The notes: generated by a model not told the origin, from the sequence alone. A stretch of DNA of 64,000 nt from Haliotis rubra (GCF_003918875.1 NW_025766996.1:496001-560000); one strand, 5' to 3'; counted from the stretch's first letter, positions 18,702 to 64,000 are shown. Numbers and translations are program-made.

Positions 18702-19211
18702 ATGTGGAATTTCGTGATTATTGCCTGCTTGATACAAGGTTCGCTCGGCCGCATCGTTCCTTTCGCAATTGGCCGTGGTTCCGTGGACTCGCCCACTGGT
18801 CAGCCGGACGGGTCCCCCCCTCCTGACAAGGTGTACCCTTCCCCGGGGGTGGTCACTCTGGGAGGAACTGGTTCTGGGAAGACAGAGTTCGCTTTACCGA
18901 ACTCCGTGTGGACTGGGGACCTCACTCAGAGCATGGCCAGTACCTTGTTATTGAATCAGGTTGACAGAGGTCATGTGGTGCCTTGGACAAATGACATCAA
19001 AGGTTCTGAATATGAAACTCAGTCGGGTACGGTTTCGGACACTGGTGTGACCAATGGCGGCGATGATGCCAATGTTCTTCCTGATGCCCTCGGAAATCCC
19101 GGAATTACGGCAATTGTTGCACCAACGGTGCCACAGAACCAGACGGAATCGGACACAACCATTGCAAATGGAAACCATATCTCTGGAAGCCAAATTGGTC
19201 AGGCATTTTCG
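18702..19211 (+). CDS. First coding exon V1 (170 codons) of a secreted Gly/Thr/Ser/Pro-rich protein; signal peptide; ends at phase-0 donor
   Basis: ATG followed by signal-like MWNFVIIACLIQGSLG. Coding composition stops at TCG|GTAAGT (GT at 19212), exactly 170 codons from the ATG. Clear similarity to V2. Confidence 0.8.
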
Positions 19212-19217
19212 GTAAGT

Positions 19218-19391
19218 CTGACTGACTGACTGAGTGAGTTTAGTTTTACGCCGCTTTTAGCAATATTCCAGCAATATCACGGCGGGGGACACCAGAAATG
19301 GGCTTAACACATTGTGCCCATGTGGGGAATCGAACCCGGGTCTTCGGCGTGACGAGCCAACGCTTTAACCACTAGGCTACCCCACCGCCCC
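19218..19391 (-). mobile_element. Young SINE family A inserted at the V1 splice donor
   Basis: Perfect 12-bp TSD TTTTCGGTAAGT at 19206-19217 and 19392-19403. Confidence 0.93.
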
Positions 19392-19443
19392 TTTTCGGTA
19401 AGTGGGGTTGTTAAGAATACACAATGCCATTTAGAAAGTGGTC

Positions 19444-19672
19444 TAATGTTACATGTTTTATATTTGTGATTACACTTTCTTAGCAAAGTACAGATTTTAA
19501 TACTTTCCCATCCGGGATTCGAACCCAGACCCTCAGAGTCATGCACCTAATCGCCAGCACACAAAGTCAGACGCCTAGTTTGTGGTGGAAGAAGCGGTGG
19601 CTGAGCGGGCTGAGCGTCTGACTTTGTGTGCTGGCTAAGAAAGTGTAATCCCAAATATAACATATGTTATAA
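19444..19672. mobile_element. Inverted pair of a third tRNA-headed SINE (family C)
   Basis: TGGCTGAGCGG A box and GGTTCGAATCC B box with long spacer; related copy at 35265-35361. Confidence 0.6.
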
Positions 19673-22235: not shown

Positions 22236-22432
22236 TGAGTGAATGGTTTGTCTTGTTTCGCAAATTTGTCCACCTGTATCCCATTAGATTGCTGCATATC
22301 TTCTGACTGAGCGGTTTCCTGGCTGCTAAGTCTTGACTGTAATTCAGTAATAAAATTTAAATCCCCCAACCCCCCTAAACAAACCCAAAAAACAAAGACG
22401 AAAAAAAAGACCCAACAACTCTGAAATGCGCG

Positions 22433-23053: not shown

Positions 23054-23253
23054 NNNNNNNNNNNNNNNNNNNNNNNNNNNNNNNNNNNNNNNNNNNNNNN
23101 NNNNNNNNNNNNNNNNNNNNNNNNNNNNNNNNNNNNNNNNNNNNNNNNNNNNNNNNNNNNNNNNNNNNNNNNNNNNNNNNNNNNNNNNNNNNNNNNNNNN
23201 NNNNNNNNNNNNNNNNNNNNNNNNNNNNNNNNNNNNNNNNNNNNNNNNNNNNN
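23054..23253. other. Assembly gap (200 N)
   Basis: N run; a similar ~55-bp sequence occurs on both sides (22809-22868 and 23254-23308). Confidence 0.99.
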
Positions 23254-24362: not shown

Positions 24363-24401
24363 CCTTTCGTGATACCGTAGCCGACGTAAAATGCGGCGTG
24401 G

Positions 24402-24538: not shown

Positions 24539-24596
<58 letters not shown>

Positions 24597-24616: not shown

Positions 24617-25390
24617 GAAGGTTGAACCAGGAAACGCTACCTGGGAGAAGCCCCATTCTGGGCTGCTTGTAAAGGGGAGTTGGGTTGGGTGGGGCTGGGG
24701 GTCTGAATACTGCCTTCGTGTATTTTAATCAGTAAATAATATTAAAATTAATAAAGTTAATAAAATCATAATTACGGGGCTGAAGGTGATGTTGATATAA
24801 ATCACGTCAATAAATGGCGCGATGCATATGAGCTAGATGTGACAAAAGAGTTAATACAATAAAGAATATATTATAGGACTGCTCACGAACTCAATCGAAC
24901 CGCTGTTTAACCCTCACGGCTCGTTTTATCATAATGTGTCAAAGTTCACAAAAACACAAACAATTTCGTGATGTAACTGTCCCTTCATAATCGAAAACCT
25001 ATTTTGTAATAACATAATGTAACCTATTAATCATACCTGAGAACATGTGATCTCATTATAAACCACATAAACTGTTACCATAACTGTAAAAACTGCTTTG
25101 AAGAACCAATGATTTATAGATACAAGCTGACAGAGTGACACGTAAATGGGAATGCCCAATAATATGTGGATCTGGTCGAAGAACTGTCTGAGCTGCACCT
25201 TACTAGCCTGAAGGTATGAAGAGACACTGGTGACATAAAAAAATCCCGATTCTGATACAGAGAAGTAATGATCGCTTTACCTTCACGCGAGACACTACCT
25301 GTCAGAATGATGTATTTTTATCGTGATGGGTAACGATCAGTGCATGATATCGGAAACGTCATACAGAGAGAGTAGGTCAGGGGCTTACCG

Positions 25391-25426
25391 ATAAAACAAT
25401 ACGAGTCTGATTGACAGTGTTAGAAC
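25391..25426 (+). promoter_or_regulatory. Putative core promoter of V2 (ATAAAACA + TTAGAAC 29 nt later)
   Basis: ATAAAACA at 25391 and TTAGAAC at 25420; matches the V1 upstream arrangement. Confidence 0.5.
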
Positions 25427-25484
25427 TGACTTAGGCGGGCAGTGGAAACGCCAGGGCAAGAGAAGAATCACCCGAACAAAGAAC

Positions 25485-28400
25485 ATGCGGACGATAGTGA
25501 TTCTTGCCTGTTTATTGTACAGTGTAGCTGGACATCTTGCCCCTGTTCCGCATGTACATATTCCTGTCCTCCTGCCCCACCCTGGAGTACCACCCCCGGG
25601 ACATATACCACCCCCGGGATATCCGCCACCCCCTGCAATCCATCCACCCGGAGCCTTTACGTTTGGTGGTGTCAACCATCTTCTACCCAATGGTCAGAAT
25701 GGTGTTTCGAATGGACAGCTAAGCCAGAATATGGCCAATACTCAAATATTAAATCACATTGAGTACAGGATTGTGAACGGGGTTCGGGTACCTGTAACAG
25801 GTCCTGCTGCAGGTCCTGGTGCAGGTCTTGCTGTTGATACTGCTGCTTCACAGACACAAGGCTACGGAGTAAATGGACAAAATTCTATCGTGTCTGACTC
25901 TGCGTCGAAATCGAACGCTGAACAGTTGTCCACGGGTCAGAATAAAAAAGAAGTCACCAGCGTGGAGGAGAATAGCAACTTTCTTGTTGCTCAAGCTTTC
26001 GTGGATCCTGGAAATCTTGTAGAGGAGATACCGACGGGTGGGGACACTGCAACACTGCTTGAGGAAACCACGGACACAGGATCGCCTTCTAACTCAGTGG
26101 CTGCCTCATCAACGTCAACAACGGCATCAACATCTTCAACAGATTTAGCAGCTGGTACTCCAGCAAACGTCGCAACAGATGCATCAGCTGGTCCTGGTGT
26201 GGTATCTAATGCATTGCCCGAACAAAATGGTGTCAGTACAATGGATTTCAGCCAGAGTGGAACAGCCTCAGTGGTATCTTCCAGTGAAAAGACAGCAGTT
26301 GGTACATCAGCAGCCACGGGAACCAACCCCACGGAAACCAGCCCCACAGGAACAGCAACTGAACCCGGGACCGCTAGAGACACAACCGCAACAGGCACAA
26401 CCATCACAGGCAGCCCCACAGGCTACATACAAGGATCAGAGTATCAACAGGCAGGATTCGGTTCTACTGTCACTGGGAATGGGATTCTCAATAATGTAGG
26501 TAGCCTTTATAACCTTCAATCACAGACGGCGCACAGTCACGCACTTGGCGGATCGATGACAGGAACCGCGAATTCTCTATATCCGACGGGTGCTCAAAGT
26601 GGAACGATGGCAGCCGGAAGTGATACAATGAACGCTGCATATCATACGGGAGGTCAGACAGGAACAATGACAGCTGGAAGTGGTATTGTGAATACTGCAT
26701 ATCCTACGGGAGGCCAGACAGGAAGTTTAACAGCCGGAACCGGTACTGTGAATACTGCATATCCTATGGGAGGTCAGACAGGAAGTATGACAGCTGGAAG
26801 CGGTACTGTCAATACTGCATATCCTACGGGAGGCCAGACAGGAAGTTTAACAGCCGGAACCGGTACTGTGAATACTGCATATCCTATGGGAGGTCAGACA
26901 GGAAGTATGACAGCTGGAAGCGGTACTGTCAATACTGCATATCCTACGGGAGGCCAGACAGGAAGTTTAACAGCCGGAACCGGTACTGTGAATACTGCAT
27001 ATCCTATGGGAGGTCAGACAGGAAGTATGACAGCCGGAAGCGGTATTGTGAATACTGCATATCCTATGGGAGGTCAGACAGGAAGTATGACAGCCGGAAG
27101 CGGTACTGTGAATACTGCATATCCTATGGGAGGTCAGACAGGAAGTATGACAGCTGGAAGCGGTACTGTCAATACTGCATATCCTATGGTAGGTCAGACA
27201 GGAAGTATGACAGCCGGAAGCGGTACTGTGAATACTGCATATCCTATGGGAGGTCAGACAGGAAGTATCAGCTGGAAGCGGTACTTGTAAATGGCATATC
27301 CTATGGGAGGTCAGACAGGAAGTATGACAGCCGGAAGCGGTACTGTGAATACTGCATATCCTATGGGAGGTCAGACAGGAAGTATGACAGCTGGAAGCGG
27401 TACTGTGAATACTGCATATCCTATGGGAGGTCAGACAGGAAGTATGACAGCCGGAAGCGGTACTGTAAATACTGCATATCCATATGGGAGGTCAGACAGG
27501 AAGTATGACAGCCGGAAGCGGTACTGTGAATATGCTGCATATCCTATGGGAGGTCAGACAGGAACAATGACAGCCGGAAGCGGTACTGTAAATACTGCAT
27601 ATCCAGCGGGAGGTCAGACAGGAACAATGACAGCAGGCGGAGGTCAGACCAGTACTGATATCCAAGCTCAGACAGGAAGTATGACAGCTGGAAGCGGAAC
27701 TGTAAATACTGCATATCCAATGGGAGGTCAGACAGGAAGTAATGACAGCCGGAAGCGGTACTGTGAATACTGCATATCCTATGGGAGGTCAGACAGGAAG
27801 TATCAGACAGGAATACTGCATATGACAGCAGGAAGTATGACAGGAAGCGGTACTGTGAATACTGCATATCAGACAGGAAGTATGACAGCTGGAAGGGAGT
27901 GTCAGGTACAGGGAAGTATGACAGCCGGAAGCGGTACTGTGAATACTGCATATCCTATGGGAGGTCAGACAGGAAGTATGACAGCCGGAAGCGGTACTGT
28001 AAATACTGCATATCCAATGGGAGGTCAGACAGGAACAATGACAGCCGGAAGCGGTACTGTGAATACTGCATATCCTATGGTAGGTCAGACAGGAAGTATG
28101 ACAGCTGGAAGCGGAACTGTGAATACTGCATATCCCTATAGGAGGTCAGACAGGCATACTGTGAATACATATCCGGCAGGAGCTGAGACCCAGGAGGTCT
28201 GTGAATACTGCATATCCTATGGAACAGGAAGTATGACAATGGGAGGTCAGACAGGAACAGAAGTGGTATTACTGTGAATACTGCATATCCAGCGGAAGCT
28301 ACTGTGAATACTGCATATCCTATGGACAGGGAAGTATGACAGCCGGAAGCGGTACTGTGAATACTGCATATCCTATGGGAGGTCAGACAGGAAGTATGAC

Positions 28401-29813
28401 AGCCGGAAGCTGTGAATACTGCATATCCAGCGGGAGGTCAGACAGGAAGTATGACAGCTGGAAGCGGTGCTGTAAATGCTGCATACCAATGCATATCCTA
28501 TGGGAGGTCAGACAGGAAGTATGACAGCCGGAAGCGGTACTGTGAATACTGCATATCCTATGGGAGGTCAGACAGGAAGTATGACAGCCGGAAGCGGTAC
28601 TGTGAATACTGCATATCCTATGGGAGGTCAGACAGGAAGTATGACAGCCGGAAGCGGAACTGTGAACACTGCATATCCTATGGGAGGTCAGACAGGAACA
28701 ATGACAGCCGGAAGCGGTATTATGAATACTGCATATCCTATGGGAGGTCAGACAGGAAGTATGACAGTCGGAAGCGGTATTGTGAATGCTGCATATCCTA
28801 CGGGAGGTCAGACAGGAAGTATGACAGCCGGAAGTGGTACTGTGAATACTGCATATCCAATGGGAGGTCAGACAGGAAGTATGACAGCCGAAAGCGGTAC
28901 TGTAAATGCTGCATATCCTATGGGAGGTCAGACAGGAACAATGACAGCCGGAACCGGTACTGTGAATACTGCATATCCTACGGGAGGTCAGACAGGAAGT
29001 ATGACAGCTGAGAGCGGAACTGTGAACACTGCATATCCTATGGGAGGTCAGACAGGAACAATGACAGCCGGAAGCGGTATTGTGAATACTGCATATCCTA
29101 TGGGAGGTCAGACAGGAAGTATGGCAGCTGGAACCGGTACTGTGAATACTGCATATCCTACGGGAGGTCAGACAGGAAGTATGACAGCCGGGAGCGGTAC
29201 TGTGAATGCTGTGGGAGGTCAGACAGGAACAATGACAGCCGGAAGCGGTACTGTGAATACTGCATACCCTATGGGAGGTCAGACAGGAAGTATGACAGCT
29301 GAGAGCGGAACTGTGAACACTGCATATCCTATGGGAGGTCAGACAGGAACAATGACAGCCGGAAGCGGTATTGTGAATACTGCATATCCTACGGGAGGTC
29401 AGACAGGAAGTATGGCAGCTGGAACCGGTACTGTGAATACCGCATATCCAATGGGAGGTCAGACAGGAACAATGACAGCCGGAAGCGGTACTGTGAATAC
29501 TGCATATCCTATAGGAGGTCAGACAGGAAGTATGACAGCTGGAAGCGGAACTGTGAACACTGCATATCCTATGGGAGGTCAGACAGGAACAATAACAGCC
29601 GGAAGTGGGATAGTCAACTCGGTCCATATGACTGGAAGCCAAGCAGGAACAGCGTCATCCGGTACTGTGAATTCTACATATCCAGTGAATACTGGAGCGA
29701 CGACAACCGGAAGTGGTGTCGCTACTTCTGCATATCCTGCGGTTGCACAAACAGGAACCGGAATCGGAATCACAGAGGCTACGGGAAAGAGTTCTACCAG
29801 TCAGACAATTTCG
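25485..29813 (+). CDS. First coding exon V2 (~1440 codons): signal peptide, Pro/His-rich N-terminus, Thr/Ser/Ala linker, ~50 x 20-aa GGQTGSMTAGSGTVNTAYPM repeats; ends at phase-0 donor
   Basis: ORFs 25485-27290, 27291-28277 and 28476-29852 carry the same 60-bp repeat, with frame breaks confined to a garbled patch at ~27270-28490. Signal-like MRTIVILACLLYSVAG. TCG|GTAAGA with GT at 29814, in frame. Confidence 0.8.
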
Positions 29814-36299: not shown

Positions 36300-39200
36300 A
36301 TGCATGTGCTGGGCACTGTCGCGTGCGTGCTTTACGCGCTGCACATGTGCTACGCGCAATATCCTGGACGAAGATGGCAAGGTCAAGAACGGTCAAACAG
36401 AGCATTTGGTCCCGGAATGTTAACGTAAGATTTCGTTCATCTCAAGTTACACCAACCGGGGACACATCGGAAAAGGAAAATACCGGAGGCGACCAAACAC
36501 GGAAGGAAAGTTCTGCTTCAGGAATCAGGCGCAGCGGCAGAGCTGGTCAGCAGATTCGTACGCCACAGCAAAGAATTAACCAACGACGTCGCCAAGAAAA
36601 CGTCTTAAACAGAATCCGAGCCAGGGAAAGAGCTACCTCAAGAACAAACAGTCGCTTGGCATCAGGACCCGCAATACGTGGACGTTTTGGTAGCGATGTT
36701 GCATCGAGACGCAGACAGGCGACACATGAGAAGCAGAGACGAGCCATGTTGAGGAGTAGTCAGTTAAACAGGCATCAAGGTAAGAAGGCTCAGACTCCTC
36801 TAAGAAATGCCAGACCGTTAGCAAGAAGGACTAACGGTAGACCAGCAGTGAACAAAATGCGTCCGCAAAGTTCGGAAACTGAAAACAAACAGTCACCTGA
36901 TATTGAAATGAACTCTGCAGGTCGTTTGAGGTCATCAAGTACACCTGCATTGTCTCGAGCTAATTCTAAACCACGTTTCACGAGACCAAGGACAATTTCA
37001 AGGACAAAACAAGGACAGGTCCGTATGAATAGAAATCTGGCGAGATCAGCTGTTAGGCGACCTGCGTTGGTAAGAAACCCTTCTTCCAACAAGATTCGAT
37101 CCCAGCCTGGAGTATCATCCGCTTCAACAAGGAAAATGTCACCCACTTCACGTGCCAATTCCAGACAAATGCGCCTAGAGGTTCTCCCACAGTCAAGGAC
37201 CAAGGCCATCATGCACCCGAATAGACAAGGAGAAGCCGCAGCTAGAAAGGATGTTATTCAAACTGAGACATATTCACAGAAATTGGGTGAGTTTGACTTA
37301 TTTGACAAGGGACACAACTTGTTAGGTGAACAAACCTTTTCAAACACGAACCAGAATTCAGTCAACCCATTGTTTACCAAGAGAAGTAAAAAACTACCCG
37401 GTGATATGTCTGGGACCACCTCGACACGAAACAGGATTTATAATTATGTGCAAGAGTCATCAAGATCAACAGCAGCTGAAAAGACACACGTGTACGTACA
37501 AGCACCATCAAAGCCATTGGCACCAAGAAAGATGAATGATCACCTGGAAACGCCATCAGAATCACCAAGGACAAGAAAGAATACAAATTACGTTCAGACT
37601 CCATCCAGACCATTCACTGTTTCTGAGAATAGAAGTAAGCCTAGAATGGTTGTCGCAAGTACCAATGTCAATCCTCCTTCTGGACAAATTCAACGTATAT
37701 TTCAACAAGTGTCTGATCAATTTCCAAATGCTCCGCTAGCCACAATCAAATCCATTGCACGAAGTTTATATTATGTAGCCAATCAAGCTGCTGCTCGTAA
37801 ATCCTCACAAGGACCCAAACTCGAGTTACCTGAGAATACAGCTCCAAAGCCTGCCACGATACCCAAGGTCAATACAGCAAATACTTCTGTAAGTCAAACT
37901 CAAAAGACATTGGTGCTAACTTAAATCACAACACAAGTTCTATGACGAGAGTCCGTGTCAGTTTTACTAGTTCCTCTGTGCCCAAGGAAGGTCTTACTGG
38001 TGGTATGACCACAATGAACTATTCCGGATTAGAACTCGGAACTACTGTGAAAGGAACAACGCCCCCAACGTACCGACACCCCATCATACCAAGTCAGTTT
38101 GACAGCTCAACGACAGAACCTTCACCTTTGTCACAAACACATATGTCTCCCCAATTGTCCGTTGTGTCAATGCCGACAAATAAACCCATAGCAAGCATAC
38201 CAGTTCCTCCTGGACAAAGTGAGCAGTTTATTGACGTTCAACCGCCAAGTGGCCAGCAGCCTCCCTCTCGCCCTAGTACAAAGCCTGACTACAATGTCAG
38301 GCCGCTTCCAGTGCTTCCTGGGACGTCAGAGACGCAACCAGAACTCAAAAGCGCAAACCCGACACCAGTACCTGAGACTATTCCAGGTCCCCCTACTGGA
38401 GTGTTCTCTGGTGCAGCTCCTCCTAAAGAGCCGCAACTACCTGCCGCCAGTCCCGAGGTTGTAAGCACACCTGTGGAAGTGCCATCATCTCCTATCGTCA
38501 GCAAACCTGTTCCACACCCACCGGTAGATGTACCATCACCATCTGTCGTTAGTCATAACATGGTACCCACTCCTGCTGTGGGTAAACAAGCGAGTGATAA
38601 GGTTCTACACTCACCTGCTGAAATATCATCCGTACCTGTTGCTGGGACAAAGATTGTGCAGCCACCTGCCGAAGTATTGTCATCTCCACAAGCAAGTGAT
38701 AAGGTGGTACACTCACCTGCTGATGTATCATCTGTATCTGTTGCTGGTCCAAACATTGTACAGGCTCCTGTTGAAGTGCCGTCTCTTCACGTCGCCAGTA
38801 ACAACGATCTACACGTTCCTGTACAAGTAACGCCACCGCCTGTCGACAGTCACAATGTTGTACAGCCATATGTAGAAGGATTGTCCCCATCACTTGCAAG
38901 TGATAAGGTTGTACACGCACCTGCTGAAGTATCATCTGTACCTGTTGCCGGTCCTAAGATTGTACAGCCACCTGCCGAAGTATTGTCATCATCACAAGCA
39001 AGTGTTAAGGTTGTACACGCACCAGCTGAAGTATCATCTGTATCTGTTGATGGTCCAAACATTGTACAGGCTCCTGTTGAAGTGCCGTCTCTACACGTCG
39101 CCAGTAACAACGATCTACACGTTCCTGTACAAGTATCGCCACCACCTGTCGACAGTCACAATGTTGTACAGCCATATGTAGAAGGATTGTCCCCATCACT

Positions 39201-45200: not shown

Positions 45201-47728
45201 GGCACCTGCTGAAGTTACTCCCCTACCAGTTACTAGTCACGAGGGTGGACACGCTCCCGAAGGAACAGTGATACCAGTCAACAGTAACCATGGTGAACAG
45301 GCACCTGCTGAAGTTACTCCCCTACCGGTCACTAGAGACCACGGTGAACATGTACCTGCCGAAGTAAATTCCCTACAATTCTCCACTCACAATGCCCAAA
45401 GAGCTTCTTCAACAGCAATTGGAAGTGGTAATATGTCGCAGATGCCTGTTGAGATCACATCTCCTCCTACGGCTAGATACCAGAGTGCCAAATCAACTGT
45501 TGAAATCACCACTCATCCAAATGAACAGACTTCCCAGCCTAACTCATATCACGTCTATCCAAACGCACCCAGCTTGGTAACAGTGGGATCTGTCGCTACG
45601 ACCACGCAGAGATCTCCCCTTAAACATTCAACCAATGCTCTGTCCCAAACTACAACATCAACATCATCAGCACCGACAACGACATTAGCAGCAGTAGCAA
45701 CAACACCATCTGCTGCGTCGACACCAACTGCAACATCCACACATGGGTCAGAAACAACAACAAGCCCGACAACGACAACATCAGCCGTCGCAGCATCAGC
45801 TACAGAGACAACAGCAGCTCCAGCAACAAAAGGAAACACTACAACAGGGACATGGACTCCTACATCAACAGCAGCAGCAACAACAACAACTGGGACAACA
45901 ACCCCAGCAACAACAACGCCAGCTACAACAGAGCCTACTCCGCCTCCTGAAGCAACTGAGGCCCCTGAACCTCCTGAAAATGGAGAACTCTCGCTTGCCT
46001 ATTACATTTTCCAGCATCTCCTGCCCGCTCTTTATCGGGGATATCCTCAAACTATGCCGCGCAACACCAACACCATGCAATGGCAGACGCCTCGACATAT
46101 TCCTTCAGTCCACTATGCCCAGCCTTCAGGACCTGCTCAATGGAACTATCAGCCACGAAGAGGAACTTATCCACAATCACCCGACAGAAACTCACCGGCA
46201 TATCATCCCCCAGAAACCACAGGCCCTGCAATGCACTATCAATATGGTGAAGGATCAGAAATGCCACCAGTGATGAACTCAAACGCAGAAGAACCCACAG
46301 ATGCCCAGCTCATCGCAAGGGAGTATTATCAATATAGAGATCCACTTCCAGTACAATCCATGGCAGCTCAACCTTCAGGAGTCAGAGGCTCTCCAATGTG
46401 GCATCAGTACAGCGACGTTCATACAGTGCCACCATGCTCAACTCGATGGCAGATCAACCTTCAGCTCAACCTACAGAAGCCTCACGATCTGCAATGCACC
46501 ATCAGTACAGCAACGTTCATACAGTGCCACCCATGCTCAACTCGATGGCAGATCAACCTTCAGCTCAACCTACAGAAGTTAGAGGGTCTTCAATGTATCA
46601 TCAATACAGCGATGTGCATACAGTGCCAGCCATGCTCAACTCGATGGCAGATCAACCTTCAGCTCAACCTACAGAAGTTAGAGGGTCTTCAATGTATCAT
46701 CAATACAGCGATGTGCATACAGTGCCACCCATGCTCAACTCGATGGCAGATCAACCTTCAGCTCAACCTACAGAAGCCAGACGATCTGCAATGTACCATC
46801 AGTACAGCAACGTTCATACAGTGCCACCCATGCTCAACTCGATGGCAGATCAACCTTCGGCTCAACCTACAGACGTTAGAGGGTCTTCAATGTATCATCA
46901 ATACAGCGATGTGCATACAGTGCCACTCATGCTCAACTCGATGGCAGATCAACCTTCAGCTCAACCTACAGAAGTTAGAGGGTCTTCAATGTATCATCAA
47001 TACAGCGATGTGCATACAGTGCCACTCATGCTCAACTCGATGGCAGATCAACATTCGGCTCAACCTACAGAAGTCTCACGATCTGCAATGCACCATCAGT
47101 ACAGCGACGTTCATACAGTGCCACTCATGCTCAACACGATGGCAGATCAACCTTCAGCTCAACCTACAGAAGTTAGAGGGTCTTCAATGTATCGTCAATA
47201 CAACGATGTGCATACAGTGCCACCCATGCTCAACTCGATGGCAGATCAACCTTCAGGTCAACCTACAGAAGCCTCACGATCTGTAATGCACCACTCATAC
47301 AGCGACGTACATACAATACCACCTGCGCTCAACTCGATGGCAGATCAACCTTCAGCTCAACCTACAGAAGCCTCACGATCTGTAATGCACCATCAGTACA
47401 GCGACGTTCATACAGTGCCACCTGCGCTCAATCAGTACAGCGACGTACGATGCTCAACTCGATGGCAGATCAACCTTCAGGTCAACCTACAGAAGCCTCA
47501 CGATCTGCAATGCACCATCAGTACAGCGACGTACATATAGCGCCACCCATGCTCAACTCGATGGCAGATCAACCTACAGAAGCCTCACGATCAGCAATGC
47601 ACCATCCATACAGCGACGTTCATACAGTGCCACCTGTTCGCAACTCGATGACAGCTCGTGCTACATGGAACTATCCAGGTGGTGAACAGCATCACATGTC
47701 ACCCGTGATGAAATCAATTTCAGCCAAG
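36300..47728 (+). CDS. Giant first coding exon V3 (~11.4 kb, ~3800 codons): signal peptide, Arg-rich domain, Pro/Val/His repeats, His-Gly repeats, Thr-rich tract, Met/His/Tyr repeats; ends at phase-0 donor
   Basis: ATG 36300 gives MHVLGTVACVLYALHMCYAQYPG. It joins ORFs 36323-37924, 37942-~46430, 46398-~47440 and 47450-47728 by restoring one base in short homopolymers (CCC 36411, AAAA 37902, CC ~46432) plus one break near 47445. AAG|GTACGT with GT at 47729. Confidence 0.75.
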
Positions 47729-49716: not shown

Positions 49717-49789
49717 AACACCAGCGGAGTTTCGGGAACGACTTCCACAACATCGATTAGCTCATCAACATCAAAAACAACCGTGCAAG
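49717..49789 (+). CDS. Internal 73-nt exon C1 (NTSGVSGTTSTTSISSSTSKTTVQ-G), phase 0 in / phase 1 out
   Basis: Long poly-T tract + CTACAG acceptor, open Ser/Thr-rich frame, CAAG|GTATGT donor. Phases match the upstream donors and the next exon. Confidence 0.85.
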
Positions 49790-49836
49790 GTATGTGAAAT
49801 ATCAGCCACAAAACTTTCTTAACTGTCAACTTAATG

Positions 49837-51335: not shown

Positions 51336-54300
51336 GTAACAGTGACACTGAAGTGACATCCGGTCAAGGCTTGCCTGCTGCAGCTACTTCAGGACAAGCT
51401 GTGTCAGTCCCAACCACAGGAGCTGACGTGTCGGTGCCCGTCAGTGTTGACAACCAAGGTGGCAACATGAGCTTGGTCACGGCTGGCACTGGTGTCGTCA
51501 CAGGCAACACTACCAGCAAAGTTTCAGGTGAATCATCATTGCCAAAACCAAATTCAGCTCCTCTTCCGGATACAACAGGTGCACCAACAACATTAGCCGC
51601 CGACACAACAGCTGCACCAACAGTAGCCGCCGACACAACAGCTGCACCAACAACGCTAGCCGCCGACACAACAGCTCCACCAAAAACAGTAGCTGCCGAC
51701 ACAAAAGCTGCAACAACAACACTAGCCGCCGACACAACAGCTGCACCAACAACAGCAGCTGCGAATACCACAGCTGCACCAACAGTAGCTGCCGATACAA
51801 CAGCTGCACCAACAACGCTAGCCGCCGATTCAACAGCTGCACCTGTTGCTGCCGACACAACAGCTGCACAACCAGAAGCTGCCGATACAACAGCTGCACC
51901 AACAACAGTAGCCGCTGATACAACACCTGCACCAACAGCAGCTGCCGACAAAACAGCTGCACCACCAGCAGCTGCCGATACAACAGCTGCATCATCAACA
52001 GTAGCCGCCGACACAACAGCTGCACCACCAGCAGCCGCCGACAACAACAGCTGCACCAAGCACTTACAACAGCTGCATCATCAACAGCCGATACAACAGC
52101 TGCACCAACAGCAGCAGCAAAACCGACAGCAGCTGTCGATACAACAGCTGCACATCAACAACAGTAGCCGCCGAAACAACAGCTGCACCAACACTTGCCG
52201 CCGACACAACAGCTGCACCAACAACAATTGCACCAACAACAGTAGCCGCCGAAACAACGGCTGCACCAACACTTGCCGCCGACACAACAGCTGCACCAAC
52301 AATTGCTGCCGATACAACAGCTGCACCAACAGCAGCTGCCGATACAACAGCTGCACCAACAGAAGTTGCCTCGTCAGTTGAAACGTCGTTACCACGGGTA
52401 AATTCGGCTCCACTTCCTGACCCAGTAAGGAGACGCTACAGCTGTACCGTCAGGAGTTGCAGATACAACAGCAGCACCATCATCATCAGCTGACACAACA
52501 GCTGCACCGTCAGCAGCAGCCGACACAACAGCTGCACCAATGGCGGCTGCCGATACAACAGCTGCACCAACAGAAGCTGCCGATACAACAGCTGCACCAC
52601 CACCAGCCGCCGACACAACAGCTGCACCAACAACAGAAGCCGCCGACACAACAGCTGCACGAACAATTGCTGCCGATGCAACAGCTGCACCAACAGCAGC
52701 TGGCGACACAACAGCTGCACCAACAGAAGTTGCATCGTCAGTTGAAACGTCGTTACCACGGGTAAATTCGGCTCCACTTCCTGACCCAGTAAGAGACGCT
52801 ACAGCTGTACCGTCAGGAGTTGCAGATACAACAGCAGCACCATCATCATCAGCTGACACAACAGCAGCACCGTCAGCAGCAGCCGACACAACAGCTGCAC
52901 CAACAGAAGCTGCCGATACAACAGCTGCACCAACACCAGCCGCCGCCGACACAACAGCTGCACCAACAACAGAAGCCGCCGACACAACAGCTGCACCAAC
53001 AATTGATGCCGATACAACAGCTGCACCAACAGCAGCTGCCGACACAACAGCTGCCCCAACAGAAGCTGCCGATACAACAGCTGCACCAACAGAAGTTGCC
53101 TCGTCAGTTGAAACGTCGTTACCACGGGTAAATTCGGCTCCACTTCCTGACCCAGTAAGAGACGCTACAGCTGTACCGTCAGGAGTTGCAGATACAACAG
53201 CAACAGCATCATCATCATCATCATCAACTGACACAACAACAGCACCGTCAGCAGCAGCCGACACAACAGCTGCACCAACAGCAGCTGCAGAAACCACTGC
53301 TGCATCAACAGTAGGCCAAAGCGCAGTTAATGCTCCTGAATCTAACATGATCGACAAACCCTCCGATATTGCAGGGGCTCAGCTAAAAACTCAAAAGACT
53401 GTGACATCTGACCAGTCAGTGACAAGTCTTGCAAGTGCTGGGACAGACGGCCTGAACCATGACGCTGATAAACCCCTGAGTGCAGATGTTCCGCATGTAT
53501 CCAAACTAACACCAGAGCTAGCTCGATTGTTGTTGGCAGCCGGCCTTCAACCCTGTCCTGAGATGTTTGGTCACACCAAGGCTACTTCAACTCACACATC
53601 AGACGCATCCGGACAGATGACTTCGAGTCAACATACCGTGAGTGAGTCCAACATACACTCACAGTTACATAGCGCTAACCTTCCACAAGCTCCTGTTCCA
53701 CAGTCAGCCTCAGCCTCGTCAGTCCAGCATGCAGCTTCCTCCCACCCTTTGCCATCGACTGTAGCTGCAAGTGGAACACAAACAGCAGCTACAGCTACAG
53801 CAGGAGAAACAACAGAAGGTCCTTCTGAAACGACAAATTCTATAGGTGAAGGGGGCTGCAGTGGCATCTGGGATATCACAGGCTTCAGGACGTCAGACCA
53901 CTACTGGACAAGCATCGGGTGTTGCCTCAACAGAAATTGAAGGTACTACCACTGTCCAAGTAGCCGGTAGAACCTCAACAGGAACAGAACAGACGTCTGG
54001 TGCCACGGCAGCAGACCTGGATGGTACTGCTGTTCAAACAGCCGGAGTTAGTGCTGCAGGAACAGCACACGCTTCTGGTGCTGCAACAGTAGAAGCGGAG
54101 GGCACTAGCACAGTCCATGCAGCAGGCACAGGCTCAACAGGAACGACACAAACATCAGGCTCCACAACATCACAGGCTTCTGGGGCTGCAACAATAGAAG
54201 CGGAGGGCACTAGCACAGCACAAGGCGCAGCAGGAACGTTAGCCCAGACTTCCGGTCCAACTACAACAGAAGTGGAAGGCACCAACACAATCAAAGAAAC

Positions 54301-56134
54301 CGCTACAGAACAGACGTCTGTTGGGACCACAACAGAAACAGAGGGTATGTCCACAGTCCAAGAAGCCGGTTCAGGCCCAACAGGAACGGCCCCGGCTCCT
54401 GCTCTATCCACAGCCCAAGTCTCTGGTTCCTCTATTAATGAAATGGAGGTTAGTGGTACAGCAGGAACGACACAGGCGTCTGGAACCACCACCACCGCCC
54501 ACGCTTCTGGTTCCACCACAAATGAAGTAGAGGGGACCTCCACAGTCCAAGCTGTCGGTACAGACACAGCCGGGACAGCACAAGCATCAGGTACGACCAC
54601 AGCACATGCTGAAGTAACTGGTGCTTCTACAGCTGAACCAGCTGGCGCCCCTACCGTTCAACCAACTGGCGCTTCTACGGCTGAACCAACTGACTCTCCT
54701 ACGGCTGGGCCAACTGACGCTTCTACGGCTGAACCAACTGGTGCTTCTATAGCTGAACCAACTGGCGCCCCTACCGTTCAACCAACTGGCGCTTCTACGG
54801 CTAAACCAACTGACGCTTCTACGGCTGAACCAACTGGTGCTTCTACAGCTGAACCAGCTGGCGCCCCTACCGTTCAACCAACTGGCGCTTCTACGGCTGA
54901 ACCAACTGACTCTCCTACGGCTGGACCAACTGACGCTTCTACGGCTGAACCAACTGACGCTTCTACGGCTGAACCAGCTGGCACTTCTACGGCTGGACCA
55001 ACTGACGCTTCTATGGCTGGACCAACTGACGCTTCTACGCCTGAACCAACTGACGCTTCTACGGCTGAACCAACTGACACTCCTACCGTTCAACCAACTG
55101 GTGCTTCTACAGCTGAACCAGCTGACTCTCCTACGGCTGGGCCAACTGACGCTTCTACGGCTCAATCAACTGGTGCTTCTACAGCTGAACCAGCTGGCGC
55201 CCCTACCGTTCAACCAGCTGGCGCTTCTACGGCTGAACCAACTGACTCTCCTACGACTGGGCCAACTGACGCTTCTACGGCTGAACCAACTGGTGCTTCT
55301 ATAGCTGAACCAGCTGGCACTTCTACTGCTGAACCAACTGACGCTTCTACGGCTCAACCAACTGTCGCCCCTACCGTTCAACCAACTGGCGCTCCTACGG
55401 CTGAACCAACTGGCGCCCCTACCGTTCAACCAACTGGAGCTTCTACGGCTGATCCAACTGACGCCCCTACCGTTCAACCAACTGGCGCTTCAACGGCTCA
55501 CCCAACTGAAGCTTCTACGGCTCAACCAATTGACGCTTCTACTGCTGAACCAACTGGCGCCCAAACGGCCGAACCTACTGACGCCCATACGGCTCAGCCA
55601 ACTGACGCCCATACGGCCGAACCTACTGGTGCCCATACCGCTAAACCAACTGTCGCCCAAACGGCTGAACCTACTGACGCCCATACGGCTGAACCAACTG
55701 ACGCCCATACGGCCGAACCTACTGACGCCCATACAGCTAAACCAACGGTCGCCCATACGGCTCAACCAACTGTCGCCCAAACGGCTGAACCAACTGATGC
55801 CCATACGGCTGAACCAACTGACGCCCATACGGCCGAACCTACTGACGCCCATACAGCTGAACCCACGGTCGCCCATACGGCTCAACCAACTGTCGCCCAA
55901 ACGGCTGAACCAACTGACGCCCATACGGCTGAACCAACTGACGCCCATACGGCTGAACCAACTGACGCCCATACGGCTGAACCAACTGACGCCCATACGG
56001 CCGAACCAACTGACGCCCATACAGCTGAACCAACTGGTGCTCCAAAGACTGTTCCTACTACCGCTGCCTCTGCACCTCTACCCAATGAACCCAACAGCAG
56101 CGCTGCCTCCTCAACATCACAGACATCACAGACT
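51336..56134 (+). CDS. Internal exon C2 (~1600 codons): AADTTAAPT repeats, helix-Cys motif, Thr/Ala/Gly tract, 8-aa STAEPTDA/HTAEPTDA repeats; phase 1 in / phase 0 out
   Basis: TTTTCTGTTTCCAAG acceptor gives G|GT-AAC-AGT in frame with ORF 51296. Continues through ORFs 52540-53940 and 53846-56152, with breaks at a garbled patch ~52040-52260, an extra G at ~52430 and GGGGG at 53851. ACT|GTAAGT with GT at 56135. Confidence 0.8.
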
Positions 56135-59329: not shown

Positions 59330-59505
59330 GAGTGAGTGAGTGAGTGAGCGAGTTTAGTTTTACGCCGCCCTCAGCAATATTCCAGCAATGTCAATGCGAG
59401 GGACACCAGAAATAGACTCCACACATTGTACCCATGTGGGGAATCGAACCCGGGTCTTCGGCGTGACGAGCTAACGCTTTAACCACTAGGCTAGCCCACC
59501 GCCCC
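59330..59505 (-). mobile_element. SINE family A
   Basis: TSD ACATATGCAGGA. Confidence 0.92.
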
Positions 59506-60726
59506 ACATATGCAGGATGACTTTATGAAGTATATAGATTCTGAGTCACTGTATTAAGGATAATGTTATTGTATACCATCCTAATAAACTGCAATATAGA
59601 TGGTTACATGAGCTTTAAGTCTTGCCCACGATATGCCATTGTACACTTACATCTTTAAACAATTGTATTACAACGTATAATTACACAAAGTTTTAACGCG
59701 AAATAACATAAGCACAGCTTAACTTCAAACTATACACATTTATTTCGAAAAGTGTTATTGATGTTTAGCTTTAAACAATCAGCTTCTTGCATTGAAGTAC
59801 AGAAGCTTAGCTTTGAACTATAAACTTTGTTATACATTGTATTATGAACCCTCAGCTTTGAAAATTGATATTCCATTGCCAAACTGTATCATGAACGCTA
59901 AGCTTCTTAACCTATAAACTTAAGTCACCACAATGTATTATCTGAGATTAGAATCTAAGCTTTTAAATGAACTAATTGTACTTGTATTCTTACATGATAT
60001 TATGAACGCCTATGAACTATAAACCTAACTTACCACACTGTATTATCAAAGCTTAGCTTTGAACTAAATACTCATACTATAGCCCTATATTAACCTAGAG
60101 GCTTAGTGTCAAACTATAAACGTATCATTAAGTTCACGCTAATGATATCCCATTGTAGTATTATTATGCATTCACAGTATTATTTTTACCCCACAAATTA
60201 TTTCATGATTTTCGCTTCGAGCAATTAACTAACACTACAATGCATGATATACCTGGCATTTTGAAGATATATCACAATTTATTAAATAATGGTGGCTTAA
60301 AACTATAAACTTAAAAGAAATTCTTAAAATATTAATGCATCGATAAATTGATTTTTAGTTCCTTCCTGAGCTTGTTATGTCAAAATAACTTTAACATTGT
60401 CATTATCAACGAAGCCGCATTCTTTAATCATTGTATTCCTTTTGTTTGCAACTGTAAATCACGATCTAATACTTTCCTATTTCAGGTTTGGGAAGACTGA
60501 CAAAATGATTGTAGTTTTCCATATTTTGAGACCACTTTTCATACATTGTATTAATTGTAATGCTGAAATTGTTAAATTGCAAATCAATCAGACATTTAGT
60601 GATATTATCGTGTTTAACCTTATCGAATGTGTGCTATATCTGGAATGTTAAAGTTTAGTGAATGTGTACACGAGTGATTTTATTTCAGATGAAATACTTT
60701 GTGTATTATCTTTAAGTGGTTCTTTA

Positions 60727-60897
60727 GGGGCGGTGGGGTAGCCTAATGGTTAAAGCGTTGGCTCGTCACGCCGAAGACCCGGGTTCGAATCCCCACATGG
60801 GCACAATGTGAGAAGCCCATTTCTGGTGTCCCTCGCCGTGATGTTGCTGGAATATTGCTAAAAGCGGCGTAAAACCAAACTCAGTCAGTCAGTCAGT
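60727..60897 (+). mobile_element. SINE family A
   Basis: TSD TTAAGTGGTTCTT. Confidence 0.92.
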
Positions 60898-61108
60898 TAA
60901 GTGGTTCTTAAGAATTTATAGAATGAATGGGGACAGAATTGGCGTTGATTTCAATCATTGTCTTCATTTAAAGAGACGTTTGCACGTTAAACGTACTTGC
61001 CCCTGTACAGGAACGTCAAAATGTAAGATGTAAAAAAAAAGAAACCATCAATTCATTCTTCTTTAATACCGTATAGAAGTTGTAATTTATGCTGTTTTAC
61101 AACTGTAG

Positions 61109-64000
61109 GACCTAAATCAAGCTGCAGGTCGGTTTCCAAGTTTTCCCAAACTATCACCTCAGTTGGCACGCTTGTTGCTGGAAGCTGGATTGAAACCGTG
61201 CCAAGATGATCCTTTAAAATCATCTACAATACAAGAGACGCGTTCAACAGCATCAACAACGGTGGACAGCAGTGGGCATATGACGTTAAGTCACGACGTT
61301 GGCACGACGTCGACGGCACATCCTGGATCAGACGTTTCCCAGAATCTTGATGCAACTACTCCCGCAAGCCCACTTTCTTCAAATGAGACTGCTGCTTCTT
61401 TAGCATCTTCATCAACAACATCGACGTCTTCTTCATCTTCAACAGTGACGTCTCGGAATGCCTCTAAAAGTGAAACGCTGGCTGTCGCGGGTGACCCAGG
61501 GAATCAAACTGCTGACGAGGCATCAACAACCGTATCGAGTACTGGAGGAAGGACGACCATCGTCACTGATACCACAAGGTACCTGACAAATCAGCAAATA
61601 AATGATTTAATGCCAGAAGCTGTAAATACAGTTAATGTTACAGTACCAGAGGCAAACCTTACTCAGGGACCATCGACACTTAAACCATTTCAAAATGAAA
61701 TGACAGTCGCACCTGCAGCGACTGAAGGAGCACAGGGACAAACGACTCAGACAGTTGCCTTTCTAAAGGACCAGGCATCATGGGAAATGGCTAAAAACAC
61801 TCTCCATCACAAAACGTCATCTGATTCAACATCTAATCACCTTTACACAAGCCAAACGGGGTCATTGAAAGACAGTATAAAGCAGTTGATTAGTGGCTTG
61901 TTTAGTTATGAAAACACTGTTGGGGCTAATCAGAACAGTCTTAAAGCGGTGTCAGAAGGACAATACAACTTGACAGATCTGGAGTTAGCACAGGCTCCAG
62001 TCCCAGTGAATAGTTCCACAGACATCATAATTCTAGGAACACCAGGAGCAACTGATGCAACACAAGGCCAAACAGCAGGAACACCTGATGCCGCTCAAGG
62101 CCAAACAGCAGGAACACCTGATACAGCTCAAGGCCAAACAGCAGGAGCAACGTCTGCAACACAAGGCCAAACAGCAGGAACAACTGATGCAACACAAGGC
62201 CAAACAGCAGGAACAAGTGATACAGCTCAAGGCCAAACAGCAGGAACAACTGATGCAACACAAGGCCAAACAGCAGGAACACCTGATACAGCTCAAGGCC
62301 AAACAGCAGGAACAACTGATGCAACACAAGGCCAAACAGAAAGAACAAGTGATGCACCTCAGGGCGAAACTTCAGGAGCAACTGCCACAGTGCAAGACAC
62401 AACATCAGGAACTACCGTTGCATCTCAGAACGTAACAACAGTAGATTCCAGTGCCCCTGAAAAAGAAACCACTCAAGGTCAAACACCATCAACAGTACCT
62501 GCAAACCACGAAGAAATAACTGTCACACCCCATGCACCTGAAATCGAAACAGAAGCGTCATCAACACCTAATGGCAAAACAACAGAAGGATCCAATGTGC
62601 TTGAAGCCAAAACAACACCAAACGCACCTAAAGGTGAAACCACACTGGAGCCCACTGCGTATCAGGAGGTAACCTCTCTCGAACAAAAGCAAACAACAGT
62701 GCCACATGCAAGTAAAAGCGCAGAACCACTGACAACTCTATCTGGAGGTGAAACAACAGGTACCGCACCTGCCACCCAAACCACAGCCACTCCGGCCTCC
62801 CAGGTCCATATCCCTAATCAGCCCGCCTCCTCAACTACGATGGCCAGGGTGTCCAATGCTAATACAGCAAATAAGTTTGAAAACATGACGTTAGAAAGAG
62901 CTCGGGCAGTTTTGTCAGGTAGTGTTGAAACCTGTCCATACGAGCTAGTCCTTGCTGTTTTGAAACTAGACGAATATAACGCTTCATCGGCCGAGTCAGG
63001 TACCAGTGGACACTCAAAAAAGACTAACGAAACTGAAACCGTTGCAGCGCAAGACAAATCGTCAAACACAACCGATGCTGCTCTATGCGAATCGTCAAGC
63101 ACAACCGTTGCTACAGAAGGGGAATCGTCAAGCACAACCGTTGCTACAGAAGGAGAAACGTCAAGCACAACCGTTGCAACCCTAGGCGAATCGCCAAGCA
63201 CAACCGTTGCTACAGAAGGAGAAACGTCAAGCACAACCGTTGCAGCTCAAGGTGAATCGCCAAGCACAACCGTTGCTACTAAAGGCGTATCTTCAAGCAC
63301 AACCGTTGCGACCCAAGGCGAAACGTCAAGCACAACCGTTGCTACAGAAGGAGAAACGTCAAGCACAACCGTTGCTACCCAAAGCGAAACGTCAAGCACA
63401 ACCAATGCTACACAAGGCGAAACGTTAAGCACAACCGTTGCAGCCCTAGGCGAATCGCCAAGCGCAACCGTTGCTGCTAAAGGCGTATCTTCAAGCACAA
63501 CCGTTGCTACCCAAGGCGAAACGTCAAGCACAACCAATGTTACACAAGGCGAAACGTCAAGCACAACCGTTGCAGCCCTAGGCGAATCGCCAAGCACAAC
63601 CGTTGCTACTAAAGGCGTATCTTCAAGCACAACCGTTGCGACCCAAGGCGAAACGTCAAGCACACCCAATGCTACACAAGGCGAAACGTCAAGCACAACC
63701 GTTGCAGCTTCCCAACCCGTTTCTTCTGTGACATCAGCACAAACGACATCATCACCACCAGTTATAACCAATGCTACCCAAGGTGAAATATCAAGCACAA
63801 CCACGACAGCTCTCGATTTCCACCCTTCTGAGGCATCAGGAACAACGACATCTTCAGCACCAGGCACACCGACTGCTACTCAAAATGAAAAGTCAAGTAC
63901 AACCATTCCTTCTGAGACATCTTCACTGTCAGACAAAACCACTACTGCCCATGACCAAACCACAACCGCACCTTCTGCACCAGCTGAAATAACAGGTGCA
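61109..64000 (+). CDS. Internal exon C3 (>=964 codons, runs off window): two helix-Cys motifs, 11-aa GQTAGTTDATQ and STTVATQGETS repeats, many N-x-S/T sequons
   Basis: TTTTACAACTGTAG acceptor, then phase-0 GAC CTA AAT CAA (DLNQAAGRFPSFPKLSPQLARLLLEAGLKPC...). The frame appears open to the window end on manual translation, which would explain its absence from the ORF track. Confidence 0.85.

What the first reader, a model, noticed from the sequence alone, without database searches (positions are those of the whole stretch)
18702..64000. Candidate 'variable first exon / shared constant region' gene for giant secreted repetitive proteins
Seen: three same-strand exons (18702, 25485, 36300) each open with ATG + signal peptide sharing an A-C-x-hydrophobic core (IIACLIQ, ILACLLY, TVACVLY). 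Each stops being coding exactly at a phase-0 donor: QAFS|GTAAGT 19212, QTIS|GTAAGA 29814, SISAK|GTACGT 47729. The sequence between them is TE debris with no exon I can find, while phase-0 acceptors occur downstream at 49717 and 61109 and all downstream phases chain correctly. Established: tandem promoter + first-exon cassettes spliced to common exons is how clustered protocadherins and UGT1A diversify. Inference: promoter choice here selects a 170-aa, ~1440-aa or ~3800-aa N-terminal block with very different chemistry on one Thr-rich backbone (V3 isoform >6,000 aa). This would be a modular system for a secreted biomaterial (mucus, adhesive or shell matrix). I do not recall this architecture being described for such proteins.
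Basis: partly seen in the sequence, partly recalled or inferred. Interest (0 to 1): 0.9.

Follow-up and report, generated by a model that had tools for sequence, protein, structure and literature searches.

The report
Three signal-peptide exons before mucin-like gene
Three related "start" exons for secreted, repeat-rich proteins lie in a row upstream of a giant mucin-like gene body in what looks like a mollusc genome, but no RNA data could be reached to show whether they share that body or are separate genes.

Summary
The raw observation is largely real. Three same-strand ATG + signal-peptide starts sit at 18702, 25485 and 36300.

The shared signal-peptide motif occurs only at those three ATGs in all six frames of the window. 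V1 and V2 are true paralogues in promoter, N-terminus and last 21 nt plus donor. V1 is conserved in a related species (dN/dS 0.5).

Two claims fail as written. V3 is not one open exon: it changes frame four times and its 11,429 nt are not a multiple of 3. V2 has in-frame stops in a garbled 1.25-kb core of its 60-bp array. These breaks look like assembly errors, but that is unproven.

The V3→C1→C2→C3 chain is the best-supported gene.

The key idea, V1 and V2 spliced to the same C exons, could not be tested. The only runs holding the locus proved to be DNA, and protein searches found no spliced products.

Sequence evidence is balanced. No private exons or C relics were found, and phases match. 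But short 3' exons cannot be excluded, and a 200-N gap lies between V1 and V2.

The scan's first readers proposed the same architecture at several other loci in this genome, all unchecked.

The parts
18370..18701 (+). V1 promoter region and 5' UTR. It holds a TATA-like ATAAAACAGTAAGA box that is paralogous to the one upstream of V2.
   Evidence: 79% identical to the orthologous contig L001 over about 330 bp, with no alignment further upstream. Aligns with V2 upstream.
18702..19211 (+). V1 first exon: signal peptide + 150 aa, rich in Gly/Thr/Ser. An intact ORF ending in phase 0.
   Evidence: Orthologue P0001 is 68% identical, dN/dS 0.50 at dS 0.40, and all indels are multiples of 3. Another individual carries an in-frame 9-bp deletion at 19191.
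19212..19217 (+). V1 splice donor GTAAGT.
   Evidence: Identical in L001. The read-through tails differ between the two species: 5 codons here, 27 in L001.
19218..19403 (+). SINE (interpreted as tRNA-derived) inserted directly after the donor. Its 12-bp target-site duplication TTTTCGGTAAGT gives a second, non-functional copy of the donor at 19392-19403.
   Evidence: Absent in L001. k-mer depth is about 2e7. Other copies lie in the spacers. Sequence shown.
23054..23253 (.). Assembly gap (200 N) in the V1-V2 spacer. Not filled and not bridged here.
   Evidence: The flanks are AT-rich and non-coding.
25185..25484 (+). V2 promoter region, paralogous to the V1 promoter.
25485..29813 (+). V2 first exon: signal peptide, about 370 aa of unique sequence, about 50 copies of a 60-bp (20-aa, GGQTGSMTAGSGTVNTAYPM) unit, and a 70-aa tail. 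Donor GTAAGA at 29814. The core 27269-28520 is garbled and carries in-frame stops.
   Evidence: N-terminus homologous to V1 (E 2e-4, E 2e-7). The last 21 nt plus donor are 19/21 identical to V1.
36300..47728 (+). V3: signal-peptide start (frame 0), a 516-aa Arg/Ser-rich basic block (frame 2), a 2,800-aa Pro/Val/Ser/Ala-rich block with 102/306/426/99-bp repeats (frame 1), and 99-bp MLNSMADQP.. repeats (frames 0 and 2). Donor GTACGT at 47729. There are four frame breaks as assembled.
49717..49789 (+). C1 mini-exon, 24 aa, 67% Ser/Thr. Strong acceptor and AAG|GTATGT donor. Enters in phase 0 and leaves in phase 1.
   Evidence: It is the only hit of a C1-like mini-exon scan between 19212 and 61109.
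51336..56134 (+). C2 giant exon. Ala/Thr/Pro-rich, with ADTTAAPT-type and TAEPTDA-type repeats. Three frame breaks (about 52040, 52425, 53870) that net to zero. Donor GTAAGT at 56135.
61109..64000 (+). C3 exon. Thr/Ser-rich and open to the end of the window, so the gene continues beyond it.
   Evidence: The helix-Cys node KLSPQLARLLLEAGLKPC is shared with C2 at 53488-53724 (E 3e-9).

Best explanation
This is a lineage-specific, same-strand locus for secreted, low-complexity, repeat-rich proteins. It is built from one family of three promoter + signal-peptide first exons.

Shown:
- The three starts share a signal-peptide motif.
- V1 and V2 are old tandem duplicates in promoter, N-terminus and exon end plus donor.
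- V1 is under purifying selection, and its similarity to the orthologue ends exactly at the donor, so V1 is very probably spliced.

Inferred:
- V3, C1, C2 and C3 form one giant mucin-like gene of at least 6,400 codons that runs off the window. V3 is the only signal-peptide exon within reach of C1, and all phases chain (0 -> 0/1 -> 1/0 -> 0).
- The frame breaks in V2, V3 and C2 are mostly assembly consensus errors in hard repeats, not decay.
- V1 and V2 are separate transcription units. They end in short private 3' exons, or by polyadenylation, in the TE-filled spacers (one spacer holds an unsequenced gap) rather than splicing 20-30 kb into C1.

For: - Signal-peptide motif found only at the three ATGs.
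- V1/V2 paralogy.
- V1 orthologue: ORF kept at dS 0.40, dN/dS 0.50, indels in multiples of 3, conservation from -330 to the donor. Within the species, 5 synonymous and 2 non-synonymous SNPs plus an in-frame 9-bp deletion in the exon.
- No signal-peptide-like first exon between the V3 end and C2. C1 has a strong acceptor and donor.
- The V2 array is perfectly periodic at both edges and garbled only in its centre.
- The frame breaks sit at a CCC>CC run (46395), a G5 run (about 53870) and an extra A (about 52040). The same peptide motif continues, stop-free, in the new frame after each break.
- For separate units: complete tandem gene duplicates are the commoner outcome (general knowledge). V3 has no detectable homology to V1/V2 beyond its 5' end. 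A terminal exon of a few codons cannot be seen by any ORF scan. 200 N lie in the V1-V2 spacer.
Against: - No private exon was found. tblastn finds no C1/C2/C3 relics in the spacers. Spacer-against-spacer matches are SINEs only. The C1-like mini-exon scan is empty there. Only one strong acceptor was found (23823, followed by 3 codons and a stop) and none in the V2-V3 spacer.
- Paralogous first exons of which only the last is followed by a gene body is the classic signature of a variable-first-exon cluster.
- The V1 and V2 donors are phase 0, like the C1 and C3 acceptors.
- There is no transcript evidence in either direction.
- That the frame breaks are artefacts is inferred, not shown.
Confidence: 0.42

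Rival explanations
1. V1, V2 and V3 are alternative promoter + first-exon cassettes, each spliced to the common exons C1-C2-C3. Promoter choice then puts a 170-aa, about 1,440-aa or about 3,800-aa N-terminal block on one Thr-rich backbone. This is a multiple-variable-first-exon cluster, as in clustered protocadherins and UGT1A.
For: - The three first exons are one family by signal peptide. V1 and V2 are also related by promoter and exon end.
- All lie on one strand with only TE debris between them.
- V1 is functional and ends at a conserved donor.
- No private exon, no C relics and no long ORF in the spacers.
- Phase-0 donors match the phase-0 acceptors at 49717 and 61109.
- C1 has by far the strongest acceptor downstream of V2.
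- Multiple-variable-first-exon clusters are said to be numerous in the human genome (PMC1885805 abstract).
- A silk gene with two alternative signal-peptide first exons is on record (pxn1, PMC11092239).
Against: - There is no junction evidence at all.
- Phase agreement has a 1/3 chance, and V1 and V2 count as one event because they are paralogues.
- V3's interior is unrelated to V1/V2.
- Short terminal exons would escape every scan used here.
- The gap at 23054-23253 may hide an exon.
- The same first-stage reading was given to many loci of this genome, which suggests it is a default reading of tandem 5' duplicates.
Confidence: 0.37
2. A decaying locus. V2, V3 and C2 are pseudogenes with real frameshifts and stops, and V1/V2 are leftover partial 5' duplications without a functional partner.
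For: In-frame stops and 4 + 3 frame changes are present in the assembly as given.
Against: - After every break the same repeat peptide continues for hundreds of codons without stops in the new frame.
- The damage in V2 is confined to the array centre.
- The breaks lie at homopolymers.
- V1 is intact and constrained.
Confidence: 0.1
3. The scaffold join at the 200-N gap is wrong, so V1 does not lie upstream of V2, V3 and C at all.
For: A gap of unknown true length separates V1 from everything else. DNA depth in the other individual drops to 0-10 on the left flank, 22522-23050.
Against: V1 and V2 are paralogues on the same strand, as expected of tandem duplicates.
Confidence: 0.06

Closest known systems
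Multiple-variable-first-exon clusters (clustered protocadherins, UGT1A, GCNT2)
   Same: A tandem, same-strand array of paralogous first exons. Each has its own promoter, start codon and signal peptide and ends in a donor. A single gene body follows the last one.
   Different: Splicing of V1 or V2 to the common exons is not shown. There are only three cassettes. Their interiors are unrelated repeat arrays rather than folded paralogous domains. The product would be a secreted low-complexity polymer, not a receptor or an enzyme.
Secreted mucins and mucin-like PTS proteins with giant repeat exons
   Same: A signal peptide, multi-kb single exons of tandem repeats, and 35-45% Thr+Ser+Pro+Ala.
   Different: No VWD, CysD, CK, SEA or any other Pfam domain was found in the parts tested. 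No homologue was found outside one close relative. The C-terminus lies outside the window.
Molluscan secreted-protein superfamilies with a conserved signal peptide and hypervariable mature region (conotoxin-type organisation; from general knowledge)
   Same: The signal peptide and promoter-proximal region are the best conserved parts among V1, V2 and V3, while the mature regions have diverged beyond recognition.
   Different: Members of those superfamilies are complete separate genes for small Cys-rich peptides. Here the mature parts are huge repeat arrays, and separate 3' ends were not found.
Caddisfly silk gene pxn1 with two alternative first exons, both with a signal peptide (PMC11092239)
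   Same: A secreted biomaterial gene with alternative signal-peptide first exons.
   Different: In pxn1 the alternative exons rest on transcript mapping. Here there are no transcripts, and the alternative blocks would be up to 3,800 aa.

Membership tests
Variable-first-exon / constant-exon cluster (Pcdh/UGT1A type) | Tandem paralogous first exons, each with its own promoter and start codon | tested here: met
   V1/V2: promoter, N-terminus and exon end are homologous. V3 shares only the signal-peptide motif and a weak upstream similarity.
Variable-first-exon / constant-exon cluster (Pcdh/UGT1A type) | Each variable exon ends in a donor whose phase fits the first constant exon | tested here: met
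   Donors at 19212, 29814 and 47729 are phase 0 in the local frame. The acceptors at 49717 and 61109 are phase 0. V3 is not in frame with its own ATG as assembled.
Variable-first-exon / constant-exon cluster (Pcdh/UGT1A type) | Every variable exon is spliced to the same constant exons in mRNA | not testable with these tools
   The runs that hold the locus are DNA. No RNA run holds C3. No spliced protein is in the databases.
Variable-first-exon / constant-exon cluster (Pcdh/UGT1A type) | No private downstream exons or used poly(A) sites between the variable exons | tested here: inconclusive
   No ORF, C relic or C1-like exon was found. However, short terminal exons are invisible to these scans, AATAAA motifs are frequent, and there is a 200-N gap.
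Gel-forming or secreted mucin | Signal peptide plus long Pro/Thr/Ser tandem-repeat domains encoded in giant exons | tested here: met
Gel-forming or secreted mucin | VWD/C8/TIL, CysD or cystine-knot domains | tested here: not met
   No Pfam family at E<=0.1 in seven non-repeat segments. The 3' end of the gene lies outside the window, so this holds only for the part seen.
Tandem family of complete genes with conserved signal peptide | Each member has its own 3' exon(s) and poly(A) site | tested here: inconclusive
   None was identified. This cannot be excluded without RNA.

The most novel reading that the evidence does not exclude
Promoter choice among three paralogous signal-peptide first exons (170, about 1,440 and about 3,800 aa, each with different repeat chemistry) is spliced onto one Thr/Ala-rich mucin-like body. 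That would be a protocadherin/UGT1A-style variable-first-exon system used to diversify a secreted structural polymer in a mollusc.
Probability: 0.35. Interest if true: 0.6.

Novelty: new member of a known kind. Interest (0 to 1): 0.35.

Why it matters
If V1 and V2 really splice into C1, this would be the first case I could find of the variable-first-exon design applied to a giant secreted repeat protein. A word search of the paper library for alternative first exon + signal peptide + mollusc + repetitive returned nothing. The nearest case found is a caddisfly silk gene with two alternative signal-peptide exons. It would give a simple genetic way to switch the N-terminal block of a mucus or adhesive polymer.

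If they are separate genes, the locus is an ordinary lineage-specific cluster of orphan secreted repeat proteins. Its main use would then be as a warning for annotation, because of the giant exons, the frame breaks in repeats and a SINE that duplicates a splice donor.

Tried and rejected
1. RNA evidence.
- The look-up of sequencing runs with V1 gave "RNA?" runs holding only 0.13-0.17 of the words across several organisms. That share is explained by the SINE after the donor.
- The runs holding 0.64 of the words (X15-X17, plus X18) turned out to be genomic DNA when laid.
- A second search with C3 found only those same runs.

2. Spliced products in protein databases.
- V1 found only a genomic orthologue.
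- An HMM of V1/V2 against 1.84 billion representatives found only that same protein.
- C3 and the C2 N-terminus found nothing.
- An exact look-up of the 175-aa read-through ORF was not on record.

3. Pfam on seven non-repeat segments: no family.

4. A 49-nt mini-intron at 37889-37937 to explain the frame 2 -> 1 change. Rejected, because it lands in frame 0, which is closed.

5. An intron 36425-37937 joining the signal-peptide exon straight to the frame-1 block. The phases fit, but it would discard a 559-codon open frame that is far too long to arise by chance, and the acceptor is poor. Kept only as a remote possibility.

6. Homology of the V3 exon end to the V1/V2 exon ends. A shared CAATTTC 7-mer was not upheld by alignment.

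7. Similarity of the V2 repeat unit to the C2 N-terminus. Visible by eye but not significant in tblastn.

8. Acceptor and poly(A) motif scans of the spacers. Too unspecific to decide anything: the filter also misses the acceptors inferred here for C2 and C3.

9. Earlier notes of the scan by sequence: blank.


Full report
WHAT IS IN THE SEQUENCE

The window is AT-rich eukaryotic DNA full of SINE, LINE and DNA-transposon fragments. Pfam finds RVT_1 at 7685-8140, zf-RVT at 9469-9939 and 21994-22239, and an HTH transposase head at 13869-14384. Other notes of the scan call the genome an apparent mollusc.

On the + strand from 18.7 kb onward, several GC-richer, strongly skewed blocks carry long open frames and tandem repeats.

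THE THREE STARTS

ATG codons at 18702, 25485 and 36300 open hydrophobic N-termini:
- 18702: MWNFVIIACLIQGSLG
- 25485: MRTIVILACLLYSVAG
- 36300: MHVLGTVACVLYALHMCYA

The motif M-x6-A-C-[LIVM]-[LIVM] occurs exactly three times in the six-frame translation of all 64 kb, and those three hits are these sites. The mean in 100 Markov-1 random windows is 0.3. The pattern was chosen after seeing the data, but the third match at an identical distance from the Met is still unlikely by chance. I therefore take the three signal peptides to be homologous.

V1 AND V2 ARE PARALOGUES
- Their N-terminal 90-100 aa align at 31-34% identity (E 2e-4 pairwise; E 2e-7 by tblastn).
- Their upstream regions share an ATAAAACA(G/A)TA(A/C)GA box and a CTA(A/C)CTGTCA block.
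- Their last 21 nt plus donor are 19/21 identical: GTCAG-CA-TTTCG|GTAAG.

This confirms the sister note s1-352168.

V1 IS A REAL, CONSTRAINED EXON THAT IS VERY PROBABLY SPLICED
- The only database relative of V1 is P0001, 68% identical, on a 1.6-kb genomic Logan contig of another species (L001, run DRR299178).
- The DNA alignment is conserved from about 330 bp upstream of the ATG, through the whole ORF, up to TTTCG|GTAAGT plus about 15 nt. Beyond that it is not conserved.
- All exon indels are multiples of three. dS is 0.40 and dN/dS is 0.50.
- The read-through tails are unrelated: 5 codons here, 27 in L001.
- In another individual of the window's species, the DNA contig carries 14 SNPs and two 1-bp indels in the 740 bp upstream. 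In the exon it carries 7 SNPs (5 synonymous) and one in-frame 9-bp deletion.

In the window, a SINE that I read as tRNA-derived has inserted directly behind the donor. Its 12-bp target duplication, TTTTCGGTAAGT, repeats the donor at 19392. Only the first copy keeps the frame open.

V2

The frame is the same at both ends (4,329 nt = 1,443 codons). The exon ends TCG|GTAAGA at 29814.

The 60-bp array is perfectly periodic, without frame-breaking indels, at 26607-27266 and at 28521-29589; the only indel there is a single in-frame 9-bp deletion in one unit near 29181-29229. Between 27269 and 28520 the units are fragmentary and full of small indels. Those indels create the stop at 27288 and several more at 28275-28475.

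Natural arrays usually decay at their edges, not in their centre. Clean edges with a garbled centre is what an unpolishable repeat core looks like in a long-read assembly. This is inference.

V3

V3 is not one ORF.
- The signal-peptide frame closes after 42 codons, at 36426.
- A 559-codon frame (36245-37921), encoding a basic block that is 13% Arg, overlaps it.
- A 3,150-codon frame (37834-47283; Pro/Val/Ser/Ala-rich, 102/306/426/99-bp repeats) follows.
- Then comes frame 0 (46338-47537) and then frame 2 (47177-47764), which holds ..KSISAK|GTACGT.
- Each step is a shift of -1. The total, 11,429 nt, is not a multiple of 3.

The break at 46395 is a CCC>CC difference from the ten other repeat units. 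The break near 47430 is a truncated unit.

After every break the same peptide motif goes on for hundreds of codons without stops. The breaks are therefore either very recent or artefacts.

Two intron-based repairs of the 5' breaks were tried and rejected (see Tried and rejected).

THE C EXONS
- C1 is 49717-49789. It has a 20-nt pyrimidine tract, CAG|AAC.., 24 codons that are 67% Ser/Thr, and AAG|GTATGT. It enters in phase 0 and leaves in phase 1.
- C2 starts at 51336 (..ccaag|GT AAC AGT..) and ends ACT|GTAAGT at 56134/56135. It is 4,799 nt, so with the carried base it is in frame. It contains three +1 frame changes near 52040 (an extra A), 52425 and 53870 (a G5 run).
- C3 starts at 61109 (..ctgtag|GAC) and stays open to the end of the window.
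- C2 and C3 share the node KL(T/S)P(E/Q)LARLLL-AGL-PC (E 3e-9).
- No signal-peptide-like ATG exon lies between 47767 and 51335. V3 is therefore the natural first exon of C1-C3, giving at least 19.2 kb of coding sequence, or at least 6,400 codons.

THE GAP

The 200 N at 23054-23253 lie in AT-rich spacer. No long frame reaches them. I did not try to bridge or fill them, and the laid stretch stopped at 23050. Tandem paralogy of V1 and V2 makes the join plausible but does not prove it.

THE INTERPRETATION

Everything new in the finding rests on V1 and V2 splicing to C1 or C3, and that needs RNA. It could not be obtained.
- The runs holding 0.64 of the V1 words looked like exon-only holders, since 511/801 is 0.64. 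When laid, they turned out to be DNA: one 1.46-kb contig covers upstream region, exon and the first 38 nt of the intron at uniform depth and stops in the SINE.
- The runs guessed to be RNA held only SINE words.
- No RNA run holds C3.
- Protein searches that might have caught translated transcript contigs were blank.

Sequence-level tests give a balanced picture.

For the shared model:
- One family of first exons, with only the last followed by a gene body.
- No C1, C2 or C3 relics in the spacers.
- Spacer-against-spacer similarity is SINEs only.
- No ORF of note in the spacers.
- A scan for C1-like mini-exons returns C1 alone.
- Under a strict filter, C1 is the only strong acceptor between V2 and C2.
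- Phases agree.

Against it, or neutral:
- Phase agreement is one 1/3 event.
- A terminal exon of a few codons would be invisible. The strict filter does give one candidate at 23823, followed by 3 codons and a stop. The same filter misses the acceptors inferred here for C2 and C3, so it has little power.
- The gap may hide sequence.
- V3's interior is unrelated to V1/V2.
- The scan's first readers gave the same architecture to many other loci of this genome, none checked. That makes it look like a habitual reading of 5' tandem duplicates.

COMPARISON WITH KNOWN SYSTEMS

The layout works like, and may be, a multiple-variable-first-exon cluster. Such clusters are described as numerous in the human genome (PMC1885805 abstract). 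A silk gene with two alternative signal-peptide first exons is known in a caddisfly (PMC11092239).

The defining feature, common splicing, is untested here, so I do not file the locus as a member.

The body is mucin-like in composition and exon structure. It has no mucin-type folded domain in the parts tested and no homologue outside one close relative.

VERDICT
- Observation: partly confirmed.
- Interpretation: cannot tell.
- As it stands, this is a new, lineage-specific member of the broad class of secreted repeat-protein loci, carrying a testable but unproven variable-first-exon hypothesis.
- Interest: 0.35. If the shared splicing were shown: about 0.6.

Noticed in passing
window 19206-19403: A SINE (interpreted as tRNA-derived) inserted exactly behind the V1 donor. 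Its 12-bp target-site duplication, TTTTCGGTAAGT, duplicates the last 6 exon bases plus GTAAGT, so a decoy donor lies 180 nt downstream. The insertion is absent in the related species (L001) and present in the other individual (its contig runs 38 nt into it).
   Followed up: partly
window 27269-28520: The centre of the V2 60-bp array is garbled with small indels while both edges are perfectly periodic. This is the opposite of the usual edge decay, so a local assembly-consensus problem is likely.
   Followed up: partly
window 19191 and 17673-17962: Compared with the window, the DNA contig of another individual has an in-frame 9-bp deletion near the end of V1. It also has about 52 nt in place of a roughly 290-bp segment upstream of V1, an indel or TE polymorphism. 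SNP divergence is about 1.7%.
   Followed up: no
window 53488-53724 and 61112-61375: A conserved node, KL(T/S)P(E/Q)LARLLL-AGL-PC, with about 90 aa of flanking similarity. It recurs in C2 and at the start of C3 (tblastn E 3e-9). It is the only non-repeat similarity inside the C body.
   Followed up: partly
window 36374-37921: A 516-codon open frame encoding a very basic, Arg/Ser/Thr/Asn/Gln-rich, apparently disordered block. It has no Pfam match and no repeats. It lies between the V3 signal peptide (in another frame) and the Pro/Val-rich repeats.
   Followed up: partly
window 24390-24725: A long (ATG)n/(GAT)n-type microsatellite, which reads as poly-Met or poly-Asp, directly upstream of the V2 promoter region.
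   Followed up: no
window 23040-23053 and 23254-23267: The two gap flanks end and begin with similar short strings (gtactgttatat / aatactgtataa). The contig ends might abut or overlap. I did not pursue this, by instruction.
   Followed up: no
window 11818-12291, 32347-32600, 34672-34874, 49830-50084: A second repeat family, whose ORF fragment reads ..RSMLMLLITGLSGPDSIIYRPPPY.., occurs four or more times on both strands. One copy lies directly behind the C1 donor.
   Followed up: no
window 35263-35356 (-): ARAGORN calls a tRNA-Ile(TAT)-like element here. The region matches SINE-like copies at 19506-19633, so it is probably a SINE head rather than a tRNA gene.
   Followed up: no
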